Shown here: positions 9,741-64,000 of the stretch, in pieces
How the letters are laid out: each line of letters starts with the position of its first letter
Position numbering within the stretch: position 1 is the stretch's first letter
Source of the DNA: Ruditapes philippinarum
Lineage: Eukaryota
Assembly (NCBI RefSeq): GCF_026571515.1
Contig: NW_026863858.1
Span: forward strand, 62,001-126,000
Direction: 5' to 3'
Length of the DNA stretch: 64,000 nucleotides
Notes under the pieces: generated by a model
Database searches by the model: none
Told to the model about the DNA's origin: nothing
What the model saw: the letters and a program-made list of their open reading frames with translations, nothing else
Program-made: the position numbers and the translations under genes

Positions 9741-10587
9741 TATCCTTGTCTTCTATTAAAGATTATCAAATCCGTGTAAGGGGACCGACATTCTTTATTT
9801 CCTGATTGAACCTTATACACATTACATATCTACATATTTACTTTCACACATATTTAAGATAACATTTACACTCCCTTGCCTAATTCAACTTTGCATTTTT
9901 ATCGCCTGCGCCTTTCTAATTTCCATGTTGTAAAGTCTGGTAAATGACCGATACCCTGTAATGATTCTTTAAAGGATTGACAATCTGTATATGAACTACG
10001 TAAATAACCGAGGTATATCGAGTGAAAAAAACACGAGTTGTTTCCCTTATCTTCGAATTAATGCTAAAACAATGCAAATTTAGCCGTTTTTAAACCGCTA
10101 GTTTGTGGCGATTTAAAATCCGATTTTGAAATTTATTACACCAATGAAAAGCTTAAGATCTTAGCTTTGTCTCATTAATATTTAACACATTGTTTATCAC
10201 TAAAGGTATTTAAATTTTCGGTTTTGTCACTTACCACAAGTCAGACCATTTTACATTCGTTCTATACAGTAAGATACGTCGCAATTCTACTAATAAGAAA
10301 AGCCTGTCGTCTTGTCAATTGGTGTATTTAGTTTTGGCCCTAACTGCTCTTATGGTTTATCCGAATTTGGTCATTTTTTGTATCGATACTGTTATAATAC
10401 ATATACATACATGATTCTTAAAGTAACATTAGTATAAAGTAAGTAAACAGGAGAAATCTATTTCGGTATAGGAGCGCTTTCTGTTATCTCACTTTTTGGC
10501 AATGTGAATGACATATATGAGGATGGGTTAAAATGTAATGCAGTATGGCCAATAAGTTTAACAAAAGAGCAAATATAATTTCCCAAT

Positions 10588-38674: not shown

Positions 38675-39919
38675 ATGACGACTAATTCATCAAACGTATC
38701 CCTTCTCGAGGACAAACTCTTGCAGGATGCCCATCAAAGAATTGTTAGAGAGCACATCCCGTTAATTGTGTTCTTGTTTATAATGTCCGTGCTAGGCATC
38801 ATCGGCAATATTCTGACAATCATTTTCTACGGGTACAGGGTAAAAATGACGTCTACAATTACTTTAATTCGGCTGCTGGCTATAGAAGATCTTATCGTAT
38901 GTTTTCTATTGTTTACAACGATTGCTGATCTCTTCGTTAACATACTCTTTACGGACAGTATCGTCTGTAAAGTGATGTACTTCTTCGACCACTGGTTCGT
39001 TGTTTCGTCCGTGTTTACTTTATGGATCATCTCTATTGATAGATATAGACGGATGTGTCAGCCACTTAAATCACAATTAACTGTGAAAACTGCAACAATA
39101 TCGGTCATTGTGACATCTATATTCTCAATGATATTTTCCTCTCACGATTTTATCACATACACTGCTGTAGAAGTTAATATTTCTACTTTCGACGCATCAC
39201 ATCCGTATGTAACTGGCCATTACTGTACAAATACAGACAGCCCTGATCTGCAGACGGTCGTCATCATCTTCCACGTCTTAGACGCGCTGACCATCTTCGC
39301 GTGTTTGTTAACATTTGTCTTTACGTATGGTAATATTTGGCGGGCACTTCGAGCACACAACAGAAATACAATACATTTGCACACGTCACCCATCCTTCTC
39401 CTCGCGACATAGCACATCTGATTTCAACAGTAAAGTATTAAAAACAGCGTTGACGATACTGAAAAAGACAAGAAGGAACCTGAGACTTTGCTTAACAAAC
39501 AATCTGTTCATTTTAGTCTGAGCAGCAATTTGAATAATTCGCAACCATCCATTGGTGATATAATCAATGAGACAAAACCTATGGCAACAGATAAACATAA
39601 GCAAAGACGATCTTCTTCTAAATCTTCAAAGACGAGTAGATCAGAACGGAGTCTCACTATTATGATGTTTGCAGTCACAATCGGTTTTGTCGTCTGCTTC
39701 ACCCCATACTTTATAGTTAATGTCGCTATAAGAGTATCCTCTGAAACAACCGAGGACGAACTTCGAACAATAATTGAGTTTGCCTTGAGGTCTCCATTCT
39801 GGAACAGTGTCATAAACCCTATTATATTCTGTGTATTCAATACCCAAAATACAGACCGTTATGTGAAAAAATGTCTTTTTTCTAAATGCCCAAGGAAACA
39901 ACCCAAAACAAACCCTTAA
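38675..39919 (+). CDS. Class A (rhodopsin-like) orphan GPCR, paralog 1; reading frame interrupted in ICL3
   Basis: GIIGN (TM1), LAIEDL (TM2), C..M.F.DHW...SIDRY (TM3), CFTPY (TM6), NSVINPIIF (TM7). ORFs 38675..39412 and 39488..39919 are in the same frame, with three stops at 39410-39433 that are removed by a compensating -1/+1 indel pair in homopolymers. tttcag acceptor just upstream of the ATG. Confidence 0.88.
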
Positions 39920-44915: not shown

Positions 44916-46232
44916 ATGACGCAAAATAGTAGCTATACCAACTTGACGTTATCGTCAAAGTGGGACGAACTTTTACAAGAAGCACATCGAAAGAAAGTAT
45001 TAGAATATATGCCACTGATAGTTGTACTGTTTGTGCTAGTAGTTGTCGGACTGATCGGGAACATTCTGACAATATTATTCTATGGATTTAAAATAAAGAA
45101 AACGCCTACGTTTGTACTGATATTGCTTCTGGCAATAGTTGACCTCATTGTCTGCTGTCTGGCATTCACAACTATCGCAGATCTGTGTGTTAATATTATG
45201 TTTACAAGTGAAATTCTTTGTAAATGTATGTATTTCTTGGATCACTGGTTGATGTTGTCATCCGTTCTAATTCTCTGGATAATATCCATTCATAGGTATA
45301 GAAGGATCTGCAAACCATTGGGAAGACAATTGGATGAGAGATCAGCAAAGATTGTTGTTGTCATGACAACTACGTTGTCAATGGTATATTGTATACATGT
45401 TTTCATCATTTACAAACCTGTGAAGTTAAACATATCAACTTCAGATGATTCTGTTCCAATAGTAGTTGGACATTATTGCACGAATACCGATGACCCGGAC
45501 ATTAGAGATGTTCTCATTACCTTTCATATCATTGACATAGTCTCTATATTGTTCTGCTTCGCGACATTTGTGTTTACTTATGGAAACATATGGCGCACGG
45601 TTAGACGACACACTAGAACAGCGACAACACTCAAGCAGGCTGTTCCATCAAGTTCAACTGTAAAACGTACAATACCTATTCAAAACAACTTGGAGCAGAC
45701 AAGTACTGTCAGCTCTAAAGACAATATATCAACGGAGACAACAACAACCCAGATGCAAATGAGTAATATCACAACTCTAGGAGTTTCGTTAAGACAGGGA
45801 AACGATCTTGGTCAGTCGGTGGGAGATTCTGAAAACGAATCTACAACATCAGTACCTAAAGATAACCAAAATAAGTTCAAATCTCAAAATGCTCAGAAGG
45901 ATCTGTCTTCATCTAAAGCTTCAGAAGATCAAAAAGTGCATGCCGCTTCAAAGTCTTCAACAACGTTAACACGTGAACGTAATATAACGTTGATGATGTT
46001 CGCCGTCACAGTTGGACTCGTTGTTTGTTTCACACCGTACTTTATTGGTACTGTAGGAACAAGAGCGTTGTCATCAACAAACGAATCAGAACTTAACATT
46101 GGAAATGAGTTGGCACTTCGATTTCCCTTTTTTAACAGTATTATAAACCCAATAATTTTCTGTGTGTTTAATCCGCAATATAGGAGGTACGTGCTAGGTA
46201 AACTAGCGGCTTGTCTTCTAAGGAGGAAGTAA
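44916..46232 (+). CDS. Class A (rhodopsin-like) orphan GPCR, paralog 2, intact 438 aa
   Basis: Seven hydrophobic segments; GLIGN, LAIVDL, SIHRY, CFTPY, NSIINPIIF; N-terminal sequons NSS and NLT; long S/T-rich ICL3; ttctag acceptor upstream of the ATG. Confidence 0.95.
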   Translation: MTQNSSYTNLTLSSKWDELLQEAHRKKVLEYMPLIVVLFVLVVVGLIGNILTILFYGFKIKKTPTFVLILLLAIVDLIVCCLAFTTIADLCVNIMFTSEILCKCMYFLDHWLMLSSVLILWIISIHRYRRICKPLGRQLDERSAKIVVVMTTTLSMVYCIHVFIIYKPVKLNISTSDDSVPIVVGHYCTNTDDPDIRDVLITFHIIDIVSILFCFATFVFTYGNIWRTVRRHTRTATTLKQAVPSSSTVKRTIPIQNNLEQTSTVSSKDNISTETTTTQMQMSNITTLGVSLRQGNDLGQSVGDSENESTTSVPKDNQNKFKSQNAQKDLSSSKASEDQKVHAASKSSTTLTRERNITLMMFAVTVGLVVCFTPYFIGTVGTRALSSTNESELNIGNELALRFPFFNSIINPIIFCVFNPQYRRYVLGKLAACLLRRK

Positions 46233-48299
46233 AAGACTATCTTGTATGAGTCTTTGTGATAAAAATCTACTATAACTTTATGGTGCCTTGAAACTAAAAT
46301 ACTAACTCATCAACAAACTAGTTTGTTGGTATGGGACTATATTATATCTATTATAATAACCTATTTGGGCACACTTCTATATTGTACATATTTTACTTTT
46401 TGACAAACGAAATCACTGTACCACGACTTGCAAGGATATACTATGCAATGTGCGGTTACAAGCACCTGTTACTTCCTGTAACTGTCCCTTTCTTAGGACC
46501 TAATATACATGTATATTTTGATTTGTTTGTTTCTGAGAGTTGACTCGTTTATCCGCTTTGTATTCCATACATATTTCCTTTTCTTGACCTGAAAATGTTT
46601 TTCAACACCACTCCTTATTTTCAACGTAAGTTGAAAATCACTTATAATAATTGATGTTCCTATAAAAATGAACAGCGACAAATTACATGAGATTTATTGA
46701 TATTCTAGATTGAACTGGTGGAACCTTGAGTATATCCAGCAATAGAACGTTCAATAGATAAACAGGTAGAAACTTCCTCAAATGAAAGAATAAATGAAGT
46801 CGTATGTGGGACTCGAGCCCTACGCAACGGTGAGCAGCAAGTAGTTTGAAATCATTGATTTCATAATCAGTCGATCAGGAAAGCTTTTACAATATCCGAA
46901 GAGCGTAACGTTTCATCGTATGCAAGCTCCACGTTGACACTGGTGATTGTAACAAATACGACTTCAAACGAAAATTTACTGTATCTGTCCAATGTTTTAA
47001 AACTACGTTTGATTTGTTCACTTCAATAGAAAACCAGAAAACTAGTTTCAATGTAGATCCATACACCTCGGTAAATATCACCGATTTGGACTTTTCTGAT
47101 CAATTTTCAACGGATTATTTTTAAAGATTTTTTTAACTTATTGATTTTTGACACATGCAACACACGTGGTTCAATCAATTGTTTAATTACTTGTGTCTTT
47201 TTTTAATTCATTTCTTTGATACATACATATTTATATGTAATGTTTCATAATTTCAATATCTAAAGTCGCATAATGAGTGATTGGCAAGCACAAAAACATA
47301 GTAGTAAAATCTGCAAAATATAATAAAAAAATGTTAAATTAAGATTTGAAACAACTACCTTCAATTTTAAACTGAAAGTCTAAACTCTTTTGTTACTGAG
47401 GCTAGTTAGGCAGTGTTTGTGTTAGTAACATTAAGGTATATATTAACCATGTATACCGTCACACCATACTTTAAAATCCGTTTTACTTAGGAGTCCGATA
47501 ATTACCAACAAAAGGTCATTGAATATTTCTATCAGAACTTCGATTTCTTTATGTTGGCACAATTTAAATGAAAGTGATAGCATTGAAAGTGGTAGACACT
47601 ATGATATCCCACGAGAACAGATTTTGTAAATCATGTAATATGTCAAAAACAAAAATCGAAGATGAAAACCATTTTTAATGGTCCACATTTCAGACTTTTG
47701 AGAAATAGATATGTTTATTGCTATCAATTGCCGACTTTGAATAAATTTGATTCTGTTATATCGTATTAGAGTTATATATGTGTAATGATGCGTATATGTA
47801 TATTTATCATTCCTTATGATGCTTCCATGTTTTTCTGAAATTAAAATTTCGTTCCAAAAAACAATCTCTTCTCTTTTTAGACTGTAAAAATTGCATTTTG
47901 TTGTTATCGTTATTTCTTCTCTTTTTATACTGTAAAAATTGCATTTTGTTGCTGTTGTTGTTGTTTTTGTTGTTATTTTTTTCCCTATATTCTTTTTTCA
48001 CACTGTATATTGGATCTGTATCGGCTATAAACATTGTTTTAACATGTTTAATTCTGAAAAAATTCGTATTCGAATATTCAAGATTGCAAACAATATTGAA
48101 ATCATAATTATCGGGGATGGAGTCCTAACTTGATCTCCTTCCTGATAATTTTAATTATCGGTCAGCTTGTACGTGCATGCTCTACGGATAACAGGATGGT
48201 TCAATGCGTACTTTGTATTGATTTATTCTTAATATCTTTGTTTTAATAACTGACGTCGAAAATGTTTGTACCCGTTAATTTATATTATCACGAAGAGCC

Positions 48300-48306
48300 T
48301 ATATAA
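48300..48306 (+). promoter_or_regulatory. Candidate TATA box of secreted-protein gene copy 1 (conserved at ~54213 and ~60281)
   Basis: gagccTATATAA about 85-95 bp upstream of the ATG in all three copies. Confidence 0.55.
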
Positions 48307-48388
48307 ATTGATATTTCGACGTGGATACGGAGTAAAAGATAGAAGCGTTCATTCGATAAACATATACGGAGCAGACGAACAAAACAAA

Positions 48389-49649
48389 ATGTTCACTATC
48401 AGTGGGGTTCTTATTACATGGCTATCTATGTTAAGGTAGGTGTTCTGATTGTCTTTTTGTAATTGTTGTTATTGTTTCATTTCTAGAGTATTTCTTTATT
48501 CTGTTTNNNNNNNNNNNNNNNNNNNNNNNNNNNNNNNNNNNNNNNNNNNNNNNNNNNNNNNNNNNNNNNNNNNNNNNNNNNNNNNNNNNNNNNNNNNNNN
48601 NNNNNNNNNNNNNNNNNNNNNNNNNNNNNNNNNNNNNNNNNNNNNNNNNNNNNNNNNNNNNNNNNNNNNNNNNNNNNNNNNNNNNNNNNNNNNNNNNNNN
48701 NAAGTAATAAAATACATAACATAAAAAAGTAGATATTATTAAATCTCCATCTTTTGTAGAAGTTCCAATTATTCTAATGTCCCATGCCAAATTGCTCTGT
48801 CAGAAAATGCCGATGAAAAGCCGTGAGATCTAACAAACAAAGCAAATGAATGAAATAATCACTTGATGTTCAGAACATGTCATATGGTCTTAAGGTCAAT
48901 AAAAGTGAATGTCATAATAGTTAAATGACATAATTAAAAAAGTTGCAGATTTTGTGTGAACAAGAGTGCCTGTGAATGGCATTGACATATATTAAATACT
49001 TTCTTTAGCTGAACACTGCGCAATATTAGCAAAACACCACGCTATACCAGTTACATTCTTAGCAGAACACTACCATTTTTGCAGCAGACTAGTCATAAAA
49101 CGAAAAGGGTGTTTAATGGCAGTAGAACTTACTGCATATCAACTTTTATAGAACGACTTAAGGATAAACTGATAATTTAAATATTTATTTATTTTCTTTT
49201 ATTTCAGTTTCACAGATGGCAAACCAGTCTCGACATTCACCGATGGTAACGTTACATTAGAAGAGGTAATTGGACGTAATTTTACAAACATGGCAGAAGG
49301 GATCATCTTTACTGAGAACGCCCACGACAATAAATCGGAAGAGTCAATTGTCTTCTTTGCTGCGGGCACAGACGCTTGTGACGAGACTACGGATCAAGAA
49401 GGTGCAGGAAAAGTAAATATCGCCATAGGCGTTCTACTGTTCTCTGCTGATAACATAGTGGATGAAAATCCAAGCGTAGATTACAGCTTTGAAGAAGAAG
49501 ATACAAAGAAACAAAACATAATGATAGAAAAGCTGTTCAGCAACAAAGAAACAAAGCAACGACAACATAAACACAAGAAACATCATCACAATGGCAGAAA
49601 ATTCGCACACTGGCCATCTGATTTTAAAAAAAAAACTGCAGAGCTCTAA
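48389..49649 (+). CDS. Uncharacterised secreted acidic/His-rich precursor, copy 1 (exons 48389-48435, 49208-49649)
   Basis: aaaATG MFTISGVLITWLSML AG|gtaggt ... tttcag|T FTDGKPVSTF...; phase 2 joins in frame. C-terminus extended (WPSDFKKKTAEL*) by a one-T difference. Confidence 0.8.
48507..48700. other. Assembly gap (N run) in intron of copy 1
   Basis: Ns. Confidence 1.
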
Positions 49650-50137
49650 AAGCTGACTCAGTCTTGATATTCAAGATTGGTAGAATTTGTCTATGTTGTG
49701 AATTTATGTATGTATCAATAAAATATTCCAAATGAGTAAAATATTGTTTATTTTTCTTTTCGGTATAAGCCAATAAACAAATGTGATACTGTGTTTTAAT
49801 ATAAGTGTAGCACTTTGTCTGCAACGAGTTTATCAAGCTAGATAATCAACATTTTTTTTTATCTCGTAGCACTTACGGAATCCATTATATAGAGAATAGT
49901 GAATGAGTGTAGGTTTAATACTGAATTTTTTGAACGAGAGGCTTTCATAATATTATTTATTCAACATGTTTAATAAATTCAGTATTGAACAATATCCTTT
50001 ATATATTAAATTTTATGCGGGCCTCTAAACCTACACGAATATATAACTTAACTGAAAGTGGTTTTGCCATCAAACTTTAATGATCTTAAAAACTAGAAAT
50101 AATGGTAGACTTATTTTTCTTGTATCATTATACATGT

Positions 50138-51434
50138 AACAAGAAAAACCGGGATCGCTCACCTGAGATACATTGCTAAAAAGGTCACACTTTTTATTTC
50201 TCATATTGGGTTTGTTATTTCTAACTAAGCTGCATTATAAGGTGATGTTACATGCAAAAGTATCTTAACTCTGGAAATTGTATTTTCAGAGAAGAAGAAT
50301 TTTAGTACAAGTCTATGATAACTAAGTGACCCCCGGGCGAATCCATTTAAGGCCCTGGGAATATTAATTACAAGATTATGAAAATTTTGTAGAGGTTCAC
50401 ATAGACAATGATGCATTCAAAATATCTAAGGTCAAGGCAAAGGAAGAGGACTGAGATACATTTTCCTATACAAATAATTATGAACTAAGTGGCCTCAAGG
50501 GAGTTGGCCACCTTTGAATAAAGTGGTATGATTTTTATATGCTTTTTGAAGAGGACTTTAATGTGATTCTTCATATCCCGTATCTGGGCTCTTGGCATTG
50601 TACATTCAGAGAAGATGATTTAAGACATATTTACTATTCTTGTCTATATTTAATAAGTGCTCCTCCCCTGGGTTTGGCGATTTTCTGACCCTAGTAGAGT
50701 TATTTATATCAGTTATGTATAATTAATCTACTATGTTAAGCTACGTGCCAAATACATAAGCTCTTGCAATTGTATTTTATCAGAAAATACCTAAGTTATT
50801 TCCTTTTTAAGTCCATATCAACGAAAGTGAACGGGGCATGATTTATATAACTTTTGAAGAGGACGATAAGGTGATGTTACATGCCAAATATCTAAGATCT
50901 AGGCAATGTAGTTTCTGAGGAGAAGGTTTTAAAAAATATTTTACTAACAAGACAACATAAATTAAGGGCAAGGGTCCCATGGCAAGATCAATTTAACCCA
51001 AGGGACATGATATATATAATATTGTATATTTAAGTAGGATGTCACTTGGCATTGAAGTTTCATCAAACTAAGAAGACTAAAATGTATTTTCAATTTAAAC
51101 CTATGTAAATTAAGTGACCCCTATTTCATGGCCAATTTTAACACCAGGGACATGATTTTATAATGTGATTTTTCATGCTAAGTATTTAAGATCTCAGCAT
51201 CGTAGTTTCAGAGAAGAACATTTCAAATATTTCATTTTTAAAGCTTTCAGCTCATGTTACCTACTTATGCATCAGACTGGAGCCGTTTTTTAAGGAATAT
51301 CAAAATATCATTCCTGTGAAGTTTAGTCATATTTCATCGAGTGGTTTAAGTGATGTCTTTCAAAGAAATTGTGAACAACGACGAACGACGAACAAATTAT
51401 CATTTTCTGAGCACAAGTGTCCATGTGAGTTAGA
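50138..51434 (-). mobile_element. Old HINE-like element (also 56092-57403; truncated at 62172-62945)
   Basis: Minus-strand 3' end ctcaggtgagcgatcccggttttcttgtt, degenerate ~160-bp internal units, cgtcgttcgtcg microsatellite near the 5' end. Confidence 0.6.
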
Positions 51435-52465
51435 ACGACATACATATAAACAGAACAGAACAGAACATATAAATTATTTTGAATTAAGCAAATACAACTC
51501 ATCTTCATATACAACAAATATACAACAAATATACACATGACTGTATGAATATGAAAAATGGTAAACGGATATCAATAAATTAAATAAACTAGTGAGAGTG
51601 TAATACAAAACACATGTAATATCCTCAATACAACAAGGTGCTCTTACATATCGTTATCCGGCAAAGACTTAAATTTTTTGTGACAACATGGTCCTCCTAT
51701 CGTTATTGACATCTTTGTAAAGAAATCATCGCCTAATGAGTCGAGACGAGCAGCAAGCAAGAATTTAACGTCTGAATTAACTTGCATTTTGTCGGACAAT
51801 TTTTAAGAGAAATTATATTATATTCAAGGAAAGCCTGACATCAAACTAGAAAATGTATAGTATTGATATTTGTATTCTATATGTTTTTTTTTCATGAAAG
51901 ATATTAAAACTTGTATTAATTGTTTTAATTATCTTTTTACCAACGGGCTGTACGAACGTTTGTTAGATGAGAGACAGTCCAAGCACGAGGACTTATAAAT
52001 CTTTGTCCAAAATATGTTCATCTAAATGTCATGTTACGTTTTCAAAAGCATTTACATGGTGAATATCAATATCGGCATCCTATTTGCGACTATCTATTAC
52101 TATTTGTCTTCTATTCAAAGATTATCCAAAGAACATATCAGGTGCACGACCTGGATGCGGCGAAACATTGCGATATTGTGTACAAGTAGCTTATAGTCGA
52201 GTTGCAGTAATTGGGAAATGGTCACACTCCTTATAAGGACACAGTTACGACATTCTTTTGTTCCATAGTATATTTTTTACTCGACATACCCCTTTTATCA
52301 GTAGAATGAACATTTACTGGATTTGTGTCCATCGCCCGATTGTTTTCATAAAAGAATGATTTGTACTGAAAAGATGGTACTGTTTTAGTAAATTTAGCAA
52401 TAAGTTACCGATATGGATATTCGCCGTGATTTAGTTATTCATGTTATTCATATATTTTGATTTAA

Positions 52466-53855
52466 CTGTTATTTGCTGACGATATGGCCATCTTAGGCAA
52501 GTCACCATTGGAACTGCAAAACCATTTGGATATTTTACATTCATATTGCTCTACATGGGGATTAAAAGTAAATACAAGCAAAACAAAAGTAATGGTTTTT
52601 CAAAAACGAGGGGGGTTATTACAAAATGAGAACTGGACCTATGATGGCTAAATTTTAGAAGTTGTGAATGATTTTAATTATTTAGTACTGTATTTAATTA
52701 TACAGGTAATTTTTCGCTTAACCAAGAACACTTGGTAGGGAAAGCTTTAAAAGCTCTTAATGTTTTGTTTTATAATTGTAAAAAGTTTGGTCTCGAACCT
52801 AAAATATTATGTCCATTATTTGATGCTTTCATTGGGTCTATTTTAGGATACGGGTCTGAAATTTAGGGATACACGAAATCTAAAGAATTCGAAAGAATCC
52901 ACTTAAAATTTTGTAAACGTTTGCTTAATGTTAGAGCAATTACTTGTTCTGCTGCAGTTTATGGTGAGTTGGGGCGTTATCCGCTGTATGTGACTCGTTA
53001 CGTTAGAATTGTCAAGTTTTGGTGTAAGTTGAAAAACACTGATAATATTGTTTTAAAATCTATGTATGAAGATGGTTTATTGGATTGTAATAAAGGACAC
53101 CGCAAAAGGGTTTCAAATGTTAAAAAAATTACTCTGTAATTATGGTTTTGCTGAAATTTTTAATGAAAATTGCGTTGATGCAAAAGTGTTCCGTATCATT
53201 TTTAAACGCAGAGTTATAGACACTTTTATTCAAGAATGGACAGCTACGTTAGAACGTGGCCCAGTTTTGTTTAATTACAAAAAACTTAAGCTTAATTTTG
53301 GTTATGAAAGTTATCTTGATATTCTGCCTCGTAAATATAGATATTATTTTTGTAAATTAAGATTATCTGTACATCCTTTAAGAATACAGCCTGGGAGATT
53401 CAATAGGAATAATACACCTCGTGATCAACGATATTGTTTATGTTGCAATACATTTGACATAGAAGATGAATACCATTTTATATGTGTATGCCCTTGTTTT
53501 AATAGTCTTCGAATGCAGTATCTTAAAAAATGTTATTATATTAGACCATCTGTGTTTAAATTTATAGATCTACTTTCAACGCAAAATAAAAGTATTTTAA
53601 TTAAGTTATCTAAATATATCCATGATTCTTTATCGTTGAGAAACGCAACCATTAACTCTTAACAAAAACTGATTTGTAATTATCATCTTGCATAAAGTTT
53701 GTCCTCTTTAATCATTGCTTATTTATTTAAGAATGTTTATAATTTGTATGTTTTCGTATGCCATATGACTATGTTTAATCAAATCTTTTGTTAAACAAGA
53801 CGATGTACCTATGTATAAGTCTGTAAATAAAATTCTGTTCTGTTCTGTTTTGTTC
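52466..53855 (+). mobile_element. 5'-truncated LINE (RT C-terminal half plus C-terminal Cys/His domain), copy 1, disabled
   Basis: LLFADDMAILG, KVNTSKTKVMVF, AVYGELGRYPL, LRLSVHPLRIQ.GR...C..C...IEDEYHFICVCP; stops and frameshifts; AATAAA followed by a (TTCTG)n tail. Confidence 0.92.
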
Positions 53856-54307
53856 ATGTTAGGCTTGCACACTAACCAATATGATTACAGAAATAGTTTT
53901 TCGTTGGTTGTACAGGTCAAAACTCAGGTGTGACAATCAAAACATTATAAGTAAAAACTAAATACCGGAGGGTTGTATATTTGTGAGCATACATGCATCT
54001 GTATATGTTTCTGATTTGGTGCCGAGACCCGTTTGTTGGTCGTAAAACTTTGAATTTGAATTTTAGTTATCGGTCAGCCTTTACGTGCATGGCGGGATTG
54101 TTAGCAGGATGGTTCAATGCGTACTTTGTATTGATTTATTCTTAATATCTTTGTTTTAATAACTTACGTCGAAAATGTTTGTACCCGTTAATTTCTATTA
54201 TCACGAAGAGCCTATATAACTTAACATTTCGACGTGGATACAGAGTAAAAGACAGAAGCGTTCATTCGATTAACAGCTACGTATACGGAGTAGACGAACA
54301 AAACAAA

Positions 54308-55583
54308 ATGTTCACAATCAGTGGAGTTCTTATTACATGGCTTGTTATGTTAAGGTAGGTGTTCTTTATGATTGTCTATTTGTTGTTGTTGTTGTTTCAT
54401 TTCTAGAGTATTTCNNNNNNNNNNNNNNNNNNNNNNNNNNNNNNNNNNNNNNNNNNNNNNNNNNNNNNNNNNNNNNNNNNNNNNNNNNNNNNNNNNNNNN
54501 NNNNNNNNNNNNNNNNNNNNNNNNNNNNNNNNNNNNNNNNNNNNNNNNNNNNNNNNNNNNNNNNNNNNNNNNNNNNNNNNNNNNNNNNNNNNNNNNNNCA
54601 TAACAGCAAAAAAGTAATAAGATACATAACATAAAAAAGTAGATAAATATATATCCATCTTTTGTAGAAGTTCCCCTTATTCTAATGTACACAGCCAAAT
54701 TGCTCTGTCAGAAAATGCCAATGAAAAGCCGAGAGATCTAACAAACAAAGCAAATGAATAAAATAATCAGTTGGTGTTCAGAACATGTCAGATGGTCTTA
54801 AGGTCAATAAAAGTGACAGTTTTAATAGTTAAATGACATGATTAAAAAAGTTGCAGATTTTGTGTGAACTAGAGTGCCTATGAATGGCACTGACATATAG
54901 CAGCTACTTTCTTTAACTGAACACTGCGCTTTATTAGCAAAACACAACGCTATACCAGTTATATTCTTTAGCAGAACACTGCCATATACCATTTACCTTT
55001 TTTATCATTACCTTTTTAGCAGAACACTTTTGTTTTAAAACGAAAAGGATGTTTGATGAGTTTTGTTTTTGTTTTTTAGGGGGTTTTTTTTGAAGTAATA
55101 ATCTATAACGACTCAAAGATAAACTGATAATTTAAATATTTATTCCTTTTCTTTCATTTCAGAATAACAGATGGCAAACCAGTCTCGACATTTACTGATG
55201 GTAACGTTACATTGGAAGAGGTAATTGGACGTAATTTTACGAACATGGCAGAAGGAATCATCTTTACGGAGAACGCCCACGACAATAAATCGGAAGAATC
55301 AATTATCTTCTTTGCAGCGGGCACAGACGCTGGTGACGAGACTACGGAGCAAGAAGGTGCAGGAAAAGTAAATATCGCCATAGGCATGCTACTGTTCCCT
55401 GCTGATAACACAGTGGATGAAAATCCAAGCGTAGATTACTGCTTTGAAGAAGAAGATACATGGAAACAAAACATGATGATAGAAAAGCTGTTCAGCAACA
55501 AAGAAACAAAGCAACGACAACATAAACACAAGAAACATCACCACAATGGCAGAAAATTCGCACACTGGCCATCTCATTTTTAA
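54308..55583 (+). CDS. Uncharacterised secreted acidic/His-rich precursor, copy 2, 155 aa (exons 54308-54354, 55163-55583)
   Basis: MFTISGVLITWLVMLRITDG-KPVSTF...KQRQHKHKKHHHNGRKFAHWPSHF*; 47+421 nt = 156 codons; canonical GT-AG. Confidence 0.85.
54415..54598. other. Assembly gap (N run) in intron of copy 2
   Basis: Ns. Confidence 1.
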
Positions 55584-58500
55584 AAAAAATGTAGAACTCT
55601 AAAAGCTGACTCAGTCTTGATATTCAAGATTGGTAGAATTGGTCTATGTTGTGAATTTATGTATGTTTCAATAAAATATTCCAAATGAGTAAAATATTGT
55701 TTATTTTTCTTTTCGGTATAAGCCAATAAACAAATGTGATATTGTGTTTTAATATAATTGTAGCACACATTGTATGCAACGAGTTTATCAAGCTAGATGA
55801 TCAACATAATTTTTAACTCGTAGCACTTACGGAATCCATTTTATAGAGAATAGTGAATGAGTGTAGGTTTAATACTGAATTTTTTGAACGAGATGCTTTC
55901 ATAATATTATTTATTCAACATGTTTAATAAATTCAGTATTGAACAATATCCTTTATATATCAAATTTTATGCGGGCCTCTTAACCTACACGAATATATAA
56001 CTTAACTGAAAGTGGTTTTGCCATCAAACTTTAATGATGTTTAATACCAGAAATAATGGTAGACTTATTTTTCTTATATCATTATACATGTAACAAGAAA
56101 AACCGGGATCGCTCACCTGAGATACATTGCTAAAAAGGTCACAATTTTTATTTCTTTGGGTTTGTTATTTCTACCTAAGCTGCATTATAAGGTGATGTTG
56201 CATGCAAAAGTATCTAAACTCTGGAAATTGTATTTTCAGAGAAGAAGAATTTTAGAACAAGTCTATGATAACTAAGTGACCCCCGGGCGAATCCATTTAA
56301 GGCCCCGAGAATATTAATTACAAGATTATGAAAATTTTGTACAGGTTCATATAGACAATGATGCATACAAAATATCTAAGGTCAAGGCAAAGGAAGAGGA
56401 CTGAGATACATTTTCTTATACAAATCATTATAAACTAAGTGACCCCAAGGGAGTTGACCAACTTTGAATAAAGTGGTATGATTTTTATATGCTTTTTGAA
56501 GAGGACTATAATGTGATTATTCATCCCCCGTATCTTAGCTCTTGGTATTGTACTTTCAGAGAAGAAAATTTGAGACATATTTACTATTCTTGTCTAAATT
56601 AAATAAGTGCTCCACCCCAGGGCTTAGCGATTTTCTGACCCTAGTGGAGTTATTTATATCAGTTATATAGTAATCTACTATGTTAAGCTACGTGTCAAAT
56701 ACATAAGCTCTTACCATTGTATTTTTACAGAAAAGACCTGAAAAGATTATTTCCTATTTAAGTCCATATAAACGAAAATGAACCATTTTTTACCCAAAGG
56801 GCATGATTAGTATAACTTTTGTAGAGGACGATAAGGTGATGTTACATGTCAAATATCTAAGATCTAGGCATTGTAGTTTCTGGGGAGAAGGTTTTAGAAA
56901 ATATTTTACTAACAAGACAATATAAATTAAGGGCAAGGGTCCCATGGCAAGATCAATTTAACCCAAGGGGCATGATATATATATATAATATTATATATTT
57001 AAGTAGGATGCCACTTGGCATTGAAGTTTCATCATACTAAGAAGACTAAAATGTATTTTCAATTTAAACCTATGTAAATTAAGTGACCCCTATTTCATGG
57101 CCAATTTTAACACCAGGGACATGATTTTATAATGTGATTTTTCATGCTAAGTATTTAAGATCTCAGCATCGTAGTTTCTGAGAAGAACAATTCAAATATT
57201 TCATTTTTAAAGCTTTCAGCTCCTGTTACCTACTTATGCATCAGACTGGAGCCGTTTTTTAAGGAATACCAAAATATCATTCCTGTGAAGTTTAGTCATA
57301 TTTCATCGAGTGGTTTAAGTGATGTCTTTCAAAGAAATTGTGAACAACGACGAACGACGGACAAATTACCATTTTCTGAGCACAAGTGTCCATGTGAGTT
57401 AGAACGACATACATATAAACAGAACAGAACAGAACATATAAATTATTTTGAATTAAGCAAATACAACTCATCTTCATATACAACAAATATACAACAAATA
57501 TACACATGACTGTATGAATATGAAAAATGGTAAACGGATATCAATAAATGAAATAAACTAGTGAGAGTGTAATACAAAACACATGTAACATCCTCAATAC
57601 AACAAGGTGGTCTTACATATCGTTATCCGGCAAAGACTTAAATTTTTTGTGACAACATGATCCTCCTATCGTTATTGGACATCTTTGTAAAGCAATCATC
57701 GCCTTATGAGTCGAGACGAGCATCAAGCAAGAATTTAACGTCTGAATTAACTTGCATTTTGTCGGACAATTTTTAAGAGAAATTATATTATATTCAAGGA
57801 AAGCCTAACATCAAACTAGAAAACGTATAGTATTGATATTTGTATTCTAGATGTTTTTTTGTTATGAAAGATATTAAAACTTGTATTAATTGTATTAATT
57901 ATCTTTTTACCAACGGACTGTACAAACGTTTGTTAGATGAGAGACAATTATTTCTATAAAATCCTTACCAAATAAACAACTGACGTTATAAACACACGTA
58001 TCCTTGATTATCAGAAATCCCTACAGCTAAAGCAAGGAAAAATTGTAAAGATCAACAATATATAATGACCAACGGAGCGCTCCGAGTAAAATGATATTTG
58101 ACATAATGATTGACTCAAAACTCAAATAGATCTATATTTAAATGACCATAGTCCAAGCACGAGGACCTATAAATCTTTGTCCAAAATGTGTTCATCTTAA
58201 TGTCATGTTACGCTTTCAAAAGCATTTACATGGTGAATATCAATATCGGCATCTATTACTATTTGTCTTCTATTCAAAGATTATCCAAAGAACATATCAG
58301 GTGCACGACGAAACATTGCGATATTGTGTACAAGTAGCTTATAGTCGAGTTGCAGTAATTGGGAAATGGTCACACTCCTTAGAAGGACACAGTTACGACA
58401 TTCTTTTGTTCCATAGTATATTTTTTACTCGACATACCCCTTTTATCAGTAGAATGAACATTTACTGGATTTGTGTCCATCGCCCGATTGTTTTCATAAA

Positions 58501-58613
58501 AGAATGATTTGTACTGAAAAGATGGTAACGTTTTAGTAAATTTAGCAATAAGTTACCGATATGGATATTCGCCGTGATTTAGTTATTCATGTTATTCATA
58601 TATTTTGATTTTA

Positions 58614-60003
58614 CTGTTATTTGCTGACGATATGGCCATCTTAGGCAAGTCACCATTGGAACTGCAAAACCATTTGGATCTTTTACATTCATATTGCTCT
58701 ACATAGGGATTAAAAGTAAATACAAGCAAAACAAAAGTAATGGTTTTTCGAAAACGAGGGGGGTTATTACAAAATGAGAACTGGACCTATGATGGCCAAA
58801 TTTTAGAATTTGTGAATGATTTTTATTATTTAGGTACTGTATTTAATTATACAGGTAATTTTTCGCTTAACCAAGAACACTTGGTAGGGAAAGCTTTAAA
58901 AGCTCTTAATGTTTTGTTTTATAATTGTAAAAAGTTTGGTCTCAAATCTAAAATATTATGTCCATTATTTGATGCGTTCATTGAGTCTATTTTAGGATAC
59001 GGGTCTGAAATTTAGGGATACACGAAATCTAAAGAATTGGAAAGAATCCACTTAAAATTCTGTAAACGTTTGCTTAACGTTAGAGCAATTACTTGTTCTG
59101 CTGCAGTTTATGGTGAGTCGGGGCGTTATCCGCTGTATGTGACTCGTTACGTTAGAATTGTCAAGTTTTGGTGTAAGTTGAAAAACACTGATAATATTGT
59201 TTTAAAAACTATGTATGAAGATGGTTTATTGGATTGTAATAAAGGACACCGCAATTGGGTTTCAAATGTTAAAAAAACTACTCTGTAATTATGGTTTTGC
59301 TAAAATTTTTAATGAAAATTGCGTTGATGCAAAAGTGTTCCCTATCATTTTTAAACGCAGAGTTATAGACACTTTTATTCAAGAATGGACAGCTACGTTA
59401 GAACGTAACCCAGTTTTGTTTAATTACAAGAATTTTAAGCTTAATTTTGGTTATGAAAGTTATCTTGATATTCTGCCTTGTAAATATAGATATTATTTTT
59501 GTAAATTAAGGTTATCTGTACATCCTTTACGAATACAGACTGGGAGATACAATAGGAATAATACACCTCGTGATCAACGATATTGTTTATGTTGCAATAC
59601 ATTTGACATAGAAGATGAATACCATTTTATATGTGTATGCCCTTGTTTTAATAGTCTTCGAATGCAGTATCTTAAAAAATGTTATTATATTAGACCATCT
59701 GTGTTTAAATTTATAGATCTACTTTCAACGCAAAATAAAAGTATTTTAATTAAGTTATCTAAATATATCCATGATTCTTTATCGTGGAGAAACGCAACCA
59801 TTAACTCTTAACAAAACTGATTTGTAATTATCATCTTGCATAAAGTTTGTCCTCTTTAATCATTGTTTATTTATTTAAGAATGTTTATAATTTGTATGTT
59901 TTCGTATGCCATATGACTATGTTTAATCAAATCTTTTGTTAAACAAGACGATGTACCTATGTATAAGTCTGTAAATAAAATTCTGTTCTGTTCTGTTTTG
60001 TTC
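58614..60003 (+). mobile_element. 5'-truncated LINE, copy 2, disabled
   Basis: Near-identical to 52466-53855, with the same truncation point and shared lesions (GSEI* stop, frameshift at VKK). Confidence 0.92.
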
Positions 60004-60367
60004 ATGTTAGGCTTGCACACTAACCAATATGATTACAGAAATAGTTTTTCGTTGGTTGTACAGGTCAAAACTCAGGTGTGACAATCAAAACATTATAAGT
60101 AAAAACTAAATACCGGAGGGTTGTATATTTGTGAGCATACATGCATCTTTACGTGCATGACGGGATTGTTAGCAGGATGGTTCAATGCGTACTTTGTATT
60201 GATTAATTTTTAATATCTTTGTTTTAATAACTTACGTCGAAAATTTTCGTACCTGTTAATTTATATTATCACGAAGAGCCTATATAAATTGATGTTTCGA
60301 CGTGGATACAGAGCAAAGACAGAAGTGTTCATTCGGTAACATATACGGAGCAGACGAAAAAAACAAA

Positions 60368-61652
60368 ATGTTCACTATCAGTGGTGTTCTTATCACATGG
60401 GTAGTTATGTTAAGGTAGGTGTTCTTTATGATTGTCTATTTGTAATAGTTGTTGTTGTTGTTTCATTTCTAGAGTATTTCTTCATTCTGTTTGTTGTTTT
60501 TATTTTATTTAGTTATTTATTCTGTTCAATTTTTTTTATATTATTATTATTTTTTTATTATCATTATTATTGTTATTATCATTATAAGTATTATTATTAT
60601 TTGGATTTTTATTATTATTTATATTATCATTATTATAACTATTATTATAATTATCATTATTATTATTATTATTATTTTATTATAATTATATAATTATTAT
60701 AATTATTATTATTATAATTTAAAATGCATAACAGCAAAAAAGTAATAAAATAAATTACTGAGATCTAACAAACAAAGCAAATGAATAAAATAATCAGTAG
60801 GTGTTCAGAACATGTCAGATTGTCTTAAGGTCAATAAAAGTGACAGTTTTAATAGTTAATTGACATGATTAAAAAAGGTTGCAGATTTTGTGTGAACAAG
60901 AGTGCCTATCAATGGCACTGACATATAGCAGCTACTTTCTTTAACTGAACACTGCGCTTTATTAGCAAAACACCACGCTATACCAGTTATATTCTTTAGC
61001 AGAACACTGCCATATACCAGTTACCTCATTACCTTTTTAGCAGAACACTTTTGTCTTAAAACGAAAAGGATGTTTGATGAGTTTTGTTTTTGTTTTTTTG
61101 GGGTTTTTTTGGAAGTTGTAATCTATGATATATATTTTTCTGATGATACTGTATATTTGCATATCAACTTTTTATAACGATTCAAAGATAAACAGATAAT
61201 TTAAATATTTATTTCTTTTCTTTCATTTCAGTATAACAGATGGCAAACCAGTCTCGACATTCACCGATGGTAACGTTACATTAGAAGAGGTAATTGGACG
61301 TAATTTTACAAACATGGCAGAAGGAATCATCTTTACGGAGAACGCCCACGACAATAAATCGGAAGAATCAATTCTCTTCTTTGCCGCGGGCACAGACGCC
61401 GGTGACGAGACTACGGAGCAAGAAGGTGCAGGAAAAGTAAATATCGCCATAGGCGTGCTACTGTTCTCTGCTGATAACATAGTGAATGAAAATCCAAGCG
61501 TAGATTACAGCTTTGAAGAAGAAGATATATGGAAACAAAACATGATGATAGAAAAGCTGTTCAGCAACAAAGAAACAAAGCAACGACAACATAAACACAA
61601 GAAACACCACCACAATGGCAGAAAATTCGCACACTGGCCATCTCATTTTTAA
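60368..61652 (+). CDS. Uncharacterised secreted acidic/His-rich precursor, copy 3, 155 aa (exons 60368-60414, 61232-61652)
   Basis: MFTISGVLITWVVMLSITDG-KPVSTF...HHHNGRKFAHWPSHF*; canonical GT-AG, in frame. Confidence 0.85.
60490..60720. repeat. (TAT)n imperfect microsatellite in intron of copy 3
   Basis: Direct reading; occupies the position of the N gaps in copies 1 and 2. Confidence 0.95.
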
Positions 61653-64000
61653 AAAAAATGTAGAACTCTAAAAGCTGACTCAGTTTTGATATTCAAGATT
61701 GGTAGAATTGGTCTATGTTGTGAATTTATGTATGTATCAATAAAATATTCCAAATGAGTAAAATATTGTTTATTTTTCTTTTCGGTATAAGCCAATAAAC
61801 AAATGTGATATTGTGTTTTGATATAATTGTAGCACACATTGTCTGCAACGAGTTTATCAAGCTAGATGATCAACATTTTTTTTATCTCGTAGCACTCACG
61901 GAATCCATTATATAGACGATATTGGATGAGTGTAGGTTCAATACTGGATTTATTGAACGAGATGCTCGCATAATATTATTTATTCAACATGTTTAATAAA
62001 TTCAGTATTGAATTTACACTCATTCAATATCTTCTATATATGAAATATTAGGGAGCCTCTTGACCTACACGAATATATTACGTAACGGAAAGTGGTTTCG
62101 CTATCAAACTTTAATGATGTTTAATACCAAAAATAATGGTAGACTTATTTATCTTGTATCATTATACATGTAACAAGAAAAACCGGGATCGCTCATTTGT
62201 GATACATTGAGATAAAAGTGTGACACTTTTTATTTTTCATATTGTTCTTTTTACCTAAGCTGCATTATAAGATGATGTTACATTCAAAGTATCTAAACTC
62301 TGGACATTGTATTTTCAGAGAAGAAGATTTTTTAATACAAGTCTATGATAACTAAATGACCCCCGGGCGAATCCATTTTAGGCCCCGGAATATTAATTGC
62401 AAGATTATAAAATTTTGTAGAGGTTCACATAGACAATGATGCATACAAAATATCTAAGGTCAAGGCAATGGAAGATGTTTGTGATACTTTTTCCTATACA
62501 AATCATTACAAACTAGGTGACCCCAAGAGAGTTGGCCAACTTTGAATAAAGTGGTATGATTTTTATATGCTTTTTGAAGAGGACAACAGCTACAGACTAA
62601 TGTGATTCTTCATGACCCGTATCTAAGCTCTTGGCGTTGTACTTTCAGAGAAGAAAATTTAAGACATGGTAACTATTCTTGTCTATATTTAATAAGTGGC
62701 CCCCATGGCTTGGCGATTTTCTGACCCTAGTGGAGTTATTTATATCAGTTATGTAGTAATCTACAATGTTAAGCTACGTGCCAAATGCATAAGCTCTTAC
62801 CATTGTATTTTTGCAGAAAATACCTAAAAAGGGTATTGCTATTTAAGTCCATATAAACGAAAGTGAACCATTTTTTACCCAATGGGCATGATTTATATAA
62901 CTTTTGTAGAGGACGATAAGGTGATGTTACATGCCAAATATCTAATTTATTTTAAGCTAAGCAAATACAACTCATCTTCATATACAACAAATATACAACA
63001 AATATACAACAAATATGCACATGCATGAATATGTAAACGCATATCAATAAATGAAGTAAACTAGTGAGAGTGTTATACAACACATGTTATATTCGTATAT
63101 AACTTTAAACAATACAAATAAAGTGGTCTTATATATCATTATCCGGCATTCAATGAATCAAATCTTCATTCAAAAGCTTTATTACAATATATAGCCAAAA
63201 CAAAGACTTACATACTTTTTACAACATGGTCCTCATACTGTTATTGACATCTTTGTAAATCAATCATCGCCTAATGAATCCAGGCGATCAGCAAGTTATC
63301 GTCCTAATTAACCTGCATTTTGTTTATTTTGTCGGACATTTTTTTAAAAATTATATTATATTCAAGGAAAGCCTGAAATCAAACCAGAAAATGTATAGTA
63401 CATGTATTGATATTTGTATTCTGAATGCTTTTTGTTATGAAATATATAAAACTTGTACTCATTGTATTAATTATCTATTTTACCAACGGACTGTACGAAC
63501 GTTTGTTTACTTTAGATGTGAGAAAAAAATATTTCTATATAAGCCTTTCGAAATAAACAACTAACGTTATAAACACACGTATTCTTGATTATCAGAAATC
63601 CCTAGAGCTAAAACAAGGAAAAAGTGTAAACAGCAACAATATTTAACGACCAACGGAGCGCTCCAAGTAAAATGATATTTGACATAATGATTGACTCAAA
63701 ACTCAAATAGATCTATATTTAAATGATCATAGTCCAAGCACGAGGATCAATAAATCTGTGTCCAAAATGTGCTCATCTAAATGTCATGTAACGCTTTAAA
63801 AGCATTTACATGGTGAATATCAATATCGGCATCCTATTTGCGACTATCTATTACTATTTGTCTTCTATTCAAAGATTTTCCAAAGAACATATCAGGTGCA
63901 CGACCTGGATGCGGCGAAACATTGCGATATTGTGAACAAGTAGCTTATAGTCGAGTTGCAGTAATTGGGAAATGGTCACACTCCTTAGAAGGACACAGAT

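What the first reader, a model, noticed from the sequence alone, without database searches (positions are those of the whole stretch)
48389..61652. Hidden three-copy tandem family of a secreted precursor: signal peptide + acidic region + invariant His/Lys-rich peptide with G-RK site
Seen: the ORF track shows only exon 2. A 47-nt exon ~0.8 kb upstream (MFTISGVLITW[L/V][S/V]ML, AG|gtaggt) splices in phase to give a ~155-aa protein in all three units, with a conserved TATATAA upstream. Layout: hydrophobic N-terminus ending ..TDG-KP, an Asp/Glu-rich body with sequons NVT/NFT/NKS and no conserved Cys, then KETKQRQHKHKKHHHN-G-RK-FAHWPSHF. Established: Gly followed by dibasic residues is the convertase/PAM amidation signal, and anionic pro-regions paired with cationic His-rich peptides occur in antimicrobial and metal-binding peptide precursors. 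Inference: this could be an undescribed lineage-specific precursor releasing an amidated His-rich peptide plus a short FAHWPSHF peptide. Possible roles are antimicrobial, metal-binding, shell/adhesive matrix or signalling. I do not recognise the family.
Basis: partly seen in the sequence, partly recalled or inferred. Interest (0 to 1): 0.8.

Follow-up and report, generated by a model that had tools for sequence, protein, structure and literature searches.

The report
Clam-only secreted protein, histidine-rich tail
Three neighbouring copies of a small two-exon Manila clam gene encode a probably secreted acidic protein with a histidine- and lysine-rich tail; the genes look real, one copy is already listed in RefSeq as an uncharacterised protein, and the idea that they release an amidated peptide is untested and only weakly supported.

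Summary
Three ~6-kb tandem units each carry a 47-nt first exon, a ~0.8-kb GT-AG intron and a 420-441-nt second exon. Both N gaps lie inside introns; the gap-free third copy has the same layout. Exon 2 and the promoter plus exon 1 each occur only three times in the 1.41-Gb assembly, so this is not a transposon.

Coding is supported: dN/dS is 0.24-0.28 in the proposed frame only, changes favour third codon positions, and a ~40% identical relative exists (E 1.8e-11). Otherwise the family is tiny: only three other proteins found, no Pfam, solved-structure or Atlas match.

The invariant tail among the paralogs reflects recent duplication, not special constraint (Fisher p 0.6). The Gly-Arg of G-RK is missing in the distant relative, no basic site lies upstream of the His-rich stretch, and the three sequons are not conserved.

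Best reading: a clam-restricted secreted protein whose His/Lys tail binds metals or surfaces. The amidated-peptide precursor remains a minority reading.

The parts
48147..54049 (+). Tandem unit 1 (gene copy 1 plus intergenic DNA with a retroelement fragment)
   Evidence: Self-BLAST of unit 2 against the window: colinear blocks at 89-97% identity; repeat families with 5.9-6.1 kb spacing
54050..60146 (+). Tandem unit 2
60147..64000 (+). Tandem unit 3. It runs about 343 nt beyond the window end and lacks the retroelement piece.
   Evidence: blocks at 84-94% identity; unit-2 positions 58593-60000 have no counterpart
48300..48306 (+). TATATAA, copy 1, 89 nt upstream of the ATG
   Evidence: weak alone, since there are 25 + 28 TATATAA in the window
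54213..54219 (+). TATATAA, copy 2
60281..60287 (+). TATATAA, copy 3
48389..48435 (+). Exon 1 coding part, copy 1 (MFTISGVLITWLSML + 2 nt), donor AAG|GTAGGT
   Evidence: identical to the N-terminus of XP_060564269.1
54308..54354 (+). Exon 1 coding part, copy 2 (MFTISGVLITWLVML + 2 nt)
60368..60414 (+). Exon 1 coding part, copy 3 (MFTISGVLITWVVML + 2 nt)
48436..49207 (+). Intron, copy 1, containing the assembly gap 48507-48701 (length therefore only estimated)
54355..55162 (+). Intron, copy 2, containing the assembly gap 54415-54598
60415..61231 (+). Intron, copy 3, 817 nt, no gap. It holds a long AT-rich simple-sequence stretch at the place where copies 1 and 2 have their gaps.
49208..49649 (+). 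Exon 2 coding part, copy 1 (146 aa + stop; tail ends ...FAHWPSDFKKKTAEL)
55163..55583 (+). Exon 2 coding part, copy 2 (139 aa + stop)
61232..61652 (+). Exon 2 coding part, copy 3 (139 aa + stop)
49717..49722 (+). First AATAAA after the stop, copy 1 (second at 49772)
55670..55675 (+). First AATAAA after the stop, copy 2 (second at 55725)
61739..61744 (+). First AATAAA after the stop, copy 3 (second at 61794)
58740..59811 (+). 3' fragment of a high-copy retroelement inside unit 2 (counterpart in unit 1 at about 52921-53662). It is not part of the gene.
   Evidence: 12172 first-look candidates in the genome, 150 scored, all 150 matched; open frames up to about 1145 aa elsewhere

Best explanation
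Each ~6-kb unit carries one copy of a small two-exon gene. The three copies arose by recent tandem duplication (dS about 0.09-0.13). The family is restricted to Ruditapes philippinarum and a few relatives.

Exon 1 supplies most of a ~20-residue signal peptide. Exon 2 supplies an acidic body of ~108 residues (pI about 4, probably beta-rich, no conserved Cys) and a disordered cationic His/Lys tail of 27-34 residues (pI about 11).

Most likely the protein is secreted and works outside the cell, with the tail still attached or clipped off. The tail would act as a metal-dependent and pH-dependent binding segment for Cu/Ni/Zn ions, anionic microbial surfaces or mineral and matrix surfaces.

Shown: gene structure, copy number, purifying selection in this frame, and restricted distribution. 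Inferred: secretion (heuristic only), expression (indirect only) and the tail's role (from composition only).

My odds: real protein-coding genes about 0.9; secreted about 0.75; tail as a metal or surface-binding module about 0.35.
For: - Structure: canonical splice sites and a matching phase in 3 of 3 copies. The public model XP_060564269.1 equals the spliced copy 1, and its contig length of 139143 equals that of this window's contig.
- Selection in exon 2: pairwise dN/dS is 0.28, 0.27 and 0.24, with Fisher p of 0.005, 0.014 and 0.010. Tree totals are 14.25 nonsynonymous against 12.75 synonymous changes, binomial p 0.001.
- Frame specificity: the ratio is lowest in the proposed frame (0.28). 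The other five frames give 0.39-2.23. Variable columns by codon position are 8/3/15.
- Selection in exon 1: 4.5 synonymous against 3 nonsynonymous changes on 9.8 and 35.2 sites.
- Indels: exon 2 has 0-2 gap columns in 421, against 62-174 in the 3' part of the intron.
- Distant relative: P0004 has E 1.8e-11 and about 40% identity along exon 2. Its N-terminus looks like a read-through of the end of the intron (FCYFSFTNGK compared with FFYFSFTDGKP), which suggests the same exon boundary.
- Not a repeat: exon 2, promoter plus exon 1, and P0004 each match only these 3 loci in 1.41 Gb.
- Signal-like N-terminus: the first 15 residues form the most hydrophobic window of the protein (Kyte-Doolittle 1.79). 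T-D-G|K fits the -3/-1 rule.
- Charge split: body pI 4.05, tail pI 11.26 with 7 His and 8 Lys/Arg in 27 residues. P0004 also keeps a His-rich tail.
- Indirect expression: 20 of 24 listed runs hold part of exon 2 plus the 3' flank. Four small runs of 94-117 million letters hold 0.33-0.51 of its words, which is unlikely for DNA at about 0.07-fold coverage. One run on record as RNA holds 0.10.
Against:
- The evidence behind NCBI's model could not be inspected.
- Signal-peptide calling is heuristic. The N-region has no positive charge, and copy 2 has an Arg in the c-region.
- Exon 2's nucleotide identity (94.1-96.4%) is no higher than that of the 300 nt downstream (94.6-96.1%). Constraint therefore shows only in the type of change and in the lack of indels.
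- The structure model is poor (pLDDT 40.2, pTM 0.28), so 'beta-rich body' is weak.
- Nothing links the protein to a tissue or process. Its neighbours (a lectin-like ORF and GPCR-like ORFs) say little.
- Metal or surface binding rests on composition alone.
Confidence: 0.7

Rival explanations
1. The protein is a pro-peptide precursor. A convertase cuts after G-RK, the glycine is converted to a C-terminal amide (...HHHN-amide), and the octapeptide FAHWPSHF is released. The acidic body is a pro-region that masks the cationic part.
For: GRKFAHWPSHF is identical in the three window copies (apart from one H->D in copy 1) and in P0002 and P0003. K-F-x-H is invariant in all 6 aligned sequences, including P0004. 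Cutting after that Lys would leave a peptide with His as its third residue, which is the layout of the copper/nickel-binding ATCUN N-terminus. A review says this motif occurs in histatin, hepcidin and piscidin (PMC7701195, passages read). The acidic-body plus basic-tail layout fits.
Against: The Gly-Arg of G-RK falls in an alignment gap in P0004. No basic site lies between the signal peptide and the His-rich stretch in copies 2 and 3, so the 'amidated peptide' would be a ~115-residue protein. From recall, not from a call: Arg-Lys is the least used dibasic site. The body shows three predicted strands and a helix in a low-confidence model and changes less than the His-rich stretch in P0002 and P0003. 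No peptidomic or read data are available.
Confidence: 0.15
2. Structural matrix protein. The product is laid down in shell, periostracum, ligament or byssus-like material. The acidic body binds calcium or mineral, and the His-rich tail forms metal-coordination cross-links.
For: The body is acidic and Cys-free and the tail is His-rich. The gene is lineage-restricted and tandemly duplicated, which from recall is common for mollusc matrix proteins. Another note of this scan reads a different cationic-tailed clam family as matrix proteins (s1-810580; a lead only).
Against: The protein lacks the repetitive low-complexity body typical of matrix proteins. No expression or proteome link was found: peptide strings from this protein match 0 papers in main text, and supplements were closed.
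Confidence: 0.1
3. The reading frames are not functional genes. They are chance or decaying ORFs carried along in a young segmental duplication, or exon 2 alone is translated from the internal Met (MAEGIIF...) into a non-secreted protein.
For: Nucleotide identity in exon 2 equals that of the flanking non-coding DNA. Only copy 1's product appeared in the protein collection. There is no direct RNA evidence.
Against: The deficit of nonsynonymous change is specific to this frame. No frame-breaking indel occurs in 3 of 3 copies apart from the terminal A-run change in copy 1. A ~40% identical relative is conserved along the whole exon. Exon 1 changes are mostly synonymous. The public spliced model starts in exon 1.
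Confidence: 0.05

Closest known systems
XP_060564269.1, uncharacterized protein LOC132723549 [Ruditapes philippinarum] (P0001)
   Different: It has no name, domain or function. Copies 2 and 3 did not appear as separate proteins in the collection: P0001's 90% cluster has 1 member.
P0004, unnamed 170-aa ORF from an ENA metagenome assembly (927-nt contig)
   Same: It is the only distant relative found, with about 40% identity, E 1.8e-11 and 39 invariant columns. It shows the same order of acidic body followed by a His-rich tail, a conserved K-F-x-H, and the same apparent exon boundary.
   Different: It lacks the Gly-Arg of G-RK and the three sequons. Its tail is longer and different, with 11 His by my count of the sequence. 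Its organism is unknown.
Cathelicidin-type host-defence precursors (layout recalled, not from a call)
   Same: Both have a signal peptide, a conserved anionic part of ~100 residues and a cationic C-terminal segment that varies more between close relatives. In P0003 the His/Lys stretch differs at 7 of 17 positions against 8 of 86 in the body (p 0.003).
   Different: There is no cathelin domain and no conserved cysteines (Pfam: nothing above cut-off). In P0004 the tail is as conserved as the body or more so. No release of a peptide has been shown.
His-rich cationic peptides with an ATCUN N-terminus (histatins, piscidins; PMC7701195, passages read; other papers seen only as the listing)
   Same: The His/Lys-rich cationic composition is shared. 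If the protein were cut after the conserved Lys, the C-terminal peptide would start X-X-His.
   Different: There is no sequence relationship: the 27-residue tail matches 0 of 177635 distinct solved-structure sequences at E <= 10. Here the His-rich part sits at the end of a 15-kDa protein. A free N-terminus requires a cleavage that is hypothetical.
Bivalve amidated neuropeptide precursors (PMC4200219, passages read)
   Same: Both have a signal peptide and a Gly followed by two basic residues.
   Different: Those precursors carry peptides bounded by mono- or dibasic sites, often repeated. Here there is one site, no upstream boundary, and a large conserved body.

Membership tests
Orphan family of LOC132723549 (R. 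philippinarum) | Significant full-length sequence similarity to XP_060564269.1 | tested here: met
   Exon 2 of copy 3 against P0001: E 3e-80, 94% identity, 99% of the query covered. Copy 1 is identical to it by reading.
Amidated peptide or neuropeptide precursor (convertase plus amidating-enzyme processing) | N-terminal signal peptide | tested here: inconclusive
   Heuristics only: the most hydrophobic 15-residue window lies at residues 1-15 (Kyte-Doolittle 1.79), and T at -3 and G at -1 precede KP. No SignalP was available, and the check was made on the public protein P0001 only.
Amidated peptide or neuropeptide precursor (convertase plus amidating-enzyme processing) | The bioactive peptide is bounded on both sides by basic cleavage sites (or by the signal-peptide cut) | tested here: not met
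   In copies 2 and 3 there is no dibasic site between the signal peptide and the His-rich stretch. The only one is the internal KK inside HKHKKHHH. Copy 1 alone has TKKQ.
Amidated peptide or neuropeptide precursor (convertase plus amidating-enzyme processing) | The Gly plus dibasic amidation signal is conserved across the family | tested here: not met
   It is present in 5 of 6 aligned sequences, all of which are 87% or more identical. In the one distant member, P0004, Gly-Arg falls in a gap.
Amidated peptide or neuropeptide precursor (convertase plus amidating-enzyme processing) | Processed, amidated peptides detected | not testable with these tools
   This needs peptidomics. The peptide strings match 0 papers in main text, and supplements were closed.
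Cathelicidins | Cathelin-like pro-domain with four conserved cysteines | tested here: not met
   Pfam shows nothing above the curated cut-off for the 7 family sequences scanned (best E 0.028-0.084, all below cut-off). There are 0-1 Cys per copy and none is conserved.
ATCUN-type His-rich antimicrobial peptides | Free N-terminus with His as the third residue | not testable with these tools
   This would exist only after a hypothetical cut after Lys in K-F-x-H. That motif is invariant in 6 of 6 sequences.
Transposon-derived or repeat ORF | Many dispersed copies in the genome | tested here: not met
   Exon 2 has 3 matches from 4 candidates. Promoter plus exon 1 has 3 matches from 3 candidates. By contrast, the retroelement piece between the genes has 12172 candidates.

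The most novel reading that the evidence does not exclude
The family is a clam-specific host-defence or metal-handling precursor built on cathelicidin-like logic. A conserved acidic carrier keeps a cationic His-rich C-terminal segment inactive until a protease cuts at the conserved basic residue before F-x-H. That cut would release a His-rich (in R. philippinarum, amidated) fragment and a short peptide whose new N-terminus (Phe-Ala-His) is a copper/nickel-binding ATCUN site. This would be a new animal family of metal-dependent defence peptides.
Probability: 0.12. Interest if true: 0.6.

Novelty: new member of a known kind. Interest (0 to 1): 0.3.

Why it matters
Bivalve genomes hold many lineage-restricted secreted proteins, and a few have turned out to be defence peptides, metal binders or shell-building proteins. 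This family is a clean, small case. It has three intact young paralogues under purifying selection, no detectable domain, and a striking split into an acidic body and a His-rich tail. If the tail proves to be released or to bind metals, the family would add a new clam peptide family of interest for aquaculture immunity or metal handling. As it stands, it is an ordinary orphan gene cluster, one member of which is already in RefSeq. Copies 2 and 3 seem to lack a protein record, which is useful for annotation.

Tried and rejected
Homology searches
- Three word-index searches found only P0001-P0004: exon 2 of copy 3, a six-sequence profile (only the 8000 candidates sharing most words were scored) and P0004 residues 30-140.
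- One full HMMER pass over 1.84 billion representatives added nothing further.
- Two scans of metagenome contigs returned no DNA (345 and 108 pattern matches, none confirmed). The DNA of P0002 and P0003 was therefore never seen, and P0004's DNA was not scanned for.

Domains, folds and RNA
- Pfam gave only sub-threshold noise (PAS_GdpP, Agglutinin, Trep_dent_lipo).
- Solved-structure sequences gave one hit at E 0.66 for the profile and none for the tail.
- The ESM Atlas gave no usable hit for exon 2. For P0004 the best scores were 0.75-0.78, below the level that counts as a lead.
- AlphaFold2 on six sequences gave pLDDT 40.2. I ran no fold search, because a low-confidence model gives meaningless matches.
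- Rfam found nothing in 47500-60600.

Papers
- Neither the locus nor the accession number appears in any paper.
- Peptide strings from this protein match 0 papers.
- The 8 papers holding 'Ruditapes philippinarum', 'histidine-rich' and 'peptide' were seen only as a listing, and none looked specific.
- Supplementary tables were closed. A transcriptome or proteome list naming this gene could exist unseen.

Ideas rejected
- The 'selection signature' of the invariant tail with silent His-codon changes (note s1-812989): only 2 silent changes and 1 replacement occur in the last 27 codons (read). The tail is not more conserved than the body among the paralogues (p 0.6).
- A transposon origin.
- An assembly duplicate: the copies differ by 4-14% and by indels.

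Full report
WHAT IS THERE

The window is G000:C12345:62001-126000 of a 1.41-Gb assembly. The best protein match names Ruditapes philippinarum, the Manila clam.

From about 48147 to about 343 nt past the window end lie three tandem units of 5.9-6.1 kb. They are 84-97% identical block by block.

Each unit holds the following parts:
- A 47-nt coding exon 1 at 48389-48435, 54308-54354 or 60368-60414.
- A donor AAG|GTAGGT, then an intron of about 0.8 kb.
- A pyrimidine tract plus CAG, then exon 2 at 49208-49649, 55163-55583 or 61232-61652.
- GAGCCTATATAA 87-95 nt before the ATG, and AATAAA 68-87 nt after the stop.

The phase fits in 3 of 3 copies. The split codon reads Ser in copies 1 and 3 and Arg in copy 2.

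THE GAPS

Both N runs in the finding (48507-48701 and 54415-54598) lie inside the introns of copies 1 and 2. No reading frame crosses a gap.

Copy 3 has no gap. At the equivalent place it carries a long AT-rich simple-sequence stretch, which plausibly explains why the assembly broke there. The flanks of both gaps align colinearly with copy 3. Continuity of copies 1 and 2 is therefore supported but not proven.

INDEPENDENT CONFIRMATION OF THE SPLICE MODEL

The first homology search returned P0001, which is XP_060564269.1, 'uncharacterized protein LOC132723549 [Ruditapes philippinarum]', 162 aa. Its sequence is exactly exon 1 of copy 1, the Ser junction codon, and exon 2 of copy 1 including the extended end ...FAHWPSDFKKKTAEL.

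Its contig length of 139143 equals that of this window's contig. P0001's 90% cluster has a single member, so copies 2 and 3 seem to have no protein record.

IS IT CODING, OR ONLY A YOUNG DUPLICATE?

Nucleotide identity of exon 2 between copies is 94.1-96.4%. That is no higher than the 300 nt downstream, at 94.6-96.1%. Conservation among the three copies as such is therefore mostly recency. The kind of change, however, is that of a coding sequence:
- Pairwise dN/dS is 0.28, 0.27 and 0.24, with Fisher p of 0.005, 0.014 and 0.010.
- Tree totals are 14.25 nonsynonymous against 12.75 synonymous changes, where about 4:1 is expected. Binomial p is 0.001.
- The ratio is lowest in the proposed frame (0.28). 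The other five frames give 0.39-2.23.
- Variable columns fall 8/3/15 on codon positions 1/2/3.
- Exon 1 has 4.5 synonymous against 3 nonsynonymous changes on 9.8 and 35.2 sites, and stays hydrophobic.
- Exon 2 has 0-2 gap columns, against 62-174 in the 3' part of the intron.

A profile search of 1.84 billion representatives found one distant relative, P0004 (170 aa, ENA, 927-nt contig, E 1.8e-11). It is about 40% identical along the whole of exon 2.

P0004's N-terminus (…FCYFSFTNGK) resembles the in-frame translation of the end of the intron in the window (…FFYFSFTDGKP). It is probably a bacterial-style ORF call on genomic DNA of another mollusc with the same exon boundary.

NOT A TRANSPOSON, AND NOT PART OF A LARGER PROTEIN

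Exon 2 (3 matches of 4 candidates), promoter plus exon 1 (3 of 3) and P0004 (3 of 3) each hit only these three loci in the genome.

The public model has only these two coding exons.

The 198-aa ORF between the genes (59215-59811, with a counterpart in unit 1) is a fragment of a high-copy retroelement. It has 12172 first-look candidates; 150 were scored and all matched. It is missing from the tail of unit 3.

THE PROTEIN

On the public copy-1 protein, the first 15 residues are the most hydrophobic window (Kyte-Doolittle 1.79). T-D-G|K-P fits the -3/-1 rule. This is a heuristic; no SignalP was available.

The mature product is about 15.3-16.1 kDa:
- The 108-residue body has pI 4.05, with 21-22 Asp/Glu and 0-1 Cys.
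- The 27-residue tail of copies 2 and 3 has pI 11.26, with 7 His and 8 Lys/Arg.

AlphaFold2 on the six-sequence alignment is poor (pLDDT 40.2, pTM 0.28). It suggests three strands, one helix and a disordered tail. I ran no fold search on it.

No Pfam family reaches its cut-off. No solved structure matches by sequence. The Atlas gives nothing usable.

THE PRECURSOR IDEA

Points in favour:
- GRKFAHWPSHF is identical in the window copies (with one H->D in copy 1) and in P0002 and P0003.
- K-F-x-H is invariant in all six sequences.
- A cut after that Lys would create an N-terminus with His third. This is the layout of the copper/nickel-binding ATCUN site, which a review lists in histatin, hepcidin and piscidin (PMC7701195, passages read).

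Points against:
- The Gly-Arg of G-RK is a gap in P0004.
- No basic site bounds the His-rich stretch on its N-terminal side in copies 2 and 3.
- The three sequons are not kept in P0004.
- Bivalve neuropeptide precursors, as described in PMC4200219 (passages read), carry peptides bounded by basic sites, often in repeats. That is unlike this single site behind a large conserved body.

The 'invariant' tail among the paralogues is not special (16 of 16 against 104-105 of 112 identical, p 0.6).

In P0003 the His/Lys stretch is the most changed part (7 of 17 against 8 of 86 positions, p 0.003). In P0004 it is as conserved as the body or more so (8 of 16 against 39 of 115). Composition is kept rather than sequence, and the picture is mixed.

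EXPRESSION

The run search listed 24 runs:
- 20 hold part of exon 2 plus the 3' flank, and 3 hold half or more of its words.
- 1 is on record as RNA (share 0.10).
- Four runs of only 94-117 million letters hold 0.33-0.51. At about 0.07-fold genome coverage this would be unlikely for DNA, so these are probably transcriptomes. This is an inference.

VERDICT

The family is a narrowly distributed orphan with unknown function, and one member is already in RefSeq as uncharacterised.

The most likely mechanism is a secreted acidic protein whose His/Lys tail binds metals or surfaces in a pH-dependent way. The amidated-peptide precursor is possible but weakened.

Interest is modest, because lineage-restricted secreted proteins in tandem arrays are common in bivalves.

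SURROUNDINGS

By eye only:
- A C-type-lectin-like ORF at 30146-30838 (-).
- Two intronless GPCR-like ORFs at 38675-39919 and 44916-46232 (+).
- An ORF at 21616-22014 (-) in the region that another note relates to SGPL1.

None of these was tested, and none informs the function of the array.

Noticed in passing
window 52921-53662 and 58740-59811 (+): Units 1 and 2 each hold a 3' fragment of a very high-copy retroelement between the genes (12172 first-look candidates genome-wide). The tail of unit 3 lacks it: unit-2 positions 58593-60000 have no counterpart. The insertion therefore predates the unit 1/2 duplication or was lost at the array's end.
   Followed up: partly
window 60415-61231 (intron of copy 3); gaps at 48507-48701 and 54415-54598: The only gap-free intron carries a long AT-rich simple-sequence stretch at the place where the other two copies have assembly gaps. 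The gaps are probably assembly breaks in the same microsatellite.
   Followed up: partly
window 49618-49649: Copy 1 differs from copies 2 and 3 by H->D and by an indel in the A-run at the stop. This extends its product by 7 residues (KKKTAEL) and adds a KKK.
   Followed up: yes
window 55163: In copy 2 the codon split by the intron reads Arg instead of Ser. This places a charged residue in the c-region of the presumed signal peptide.
   Followed up: no
window 55154-55411 (-) and 61223-61480 (-): 85-aa antisense ORFs overlie exon 2. Their low nonsynonymous/synonymous ratio (0.39 in one minus frame) looks like the mirror effect of the sense frame, not a second gene.
   Followed up: partly
window 8924-9759 (+): Three overlapping ORFs of about 200-250 aa are made of short repeated peptide units (CISNVRTHY, FQMSVPII, CPYPLLYFK in the three frames). 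This is a minisatellite-like tandem repeat.
   Followed up: no
window 30146-30838 (-), 38675-39919 (+), 44916-46232 (+): By eye: a C-type-lectin-like ORF preceded by NISLEY-type repeats, and two intronless ORFs that look like rhodopsin-type receptors, the first apparently broken into two ORFs. Not tested against Pfam.
   Followed up: no
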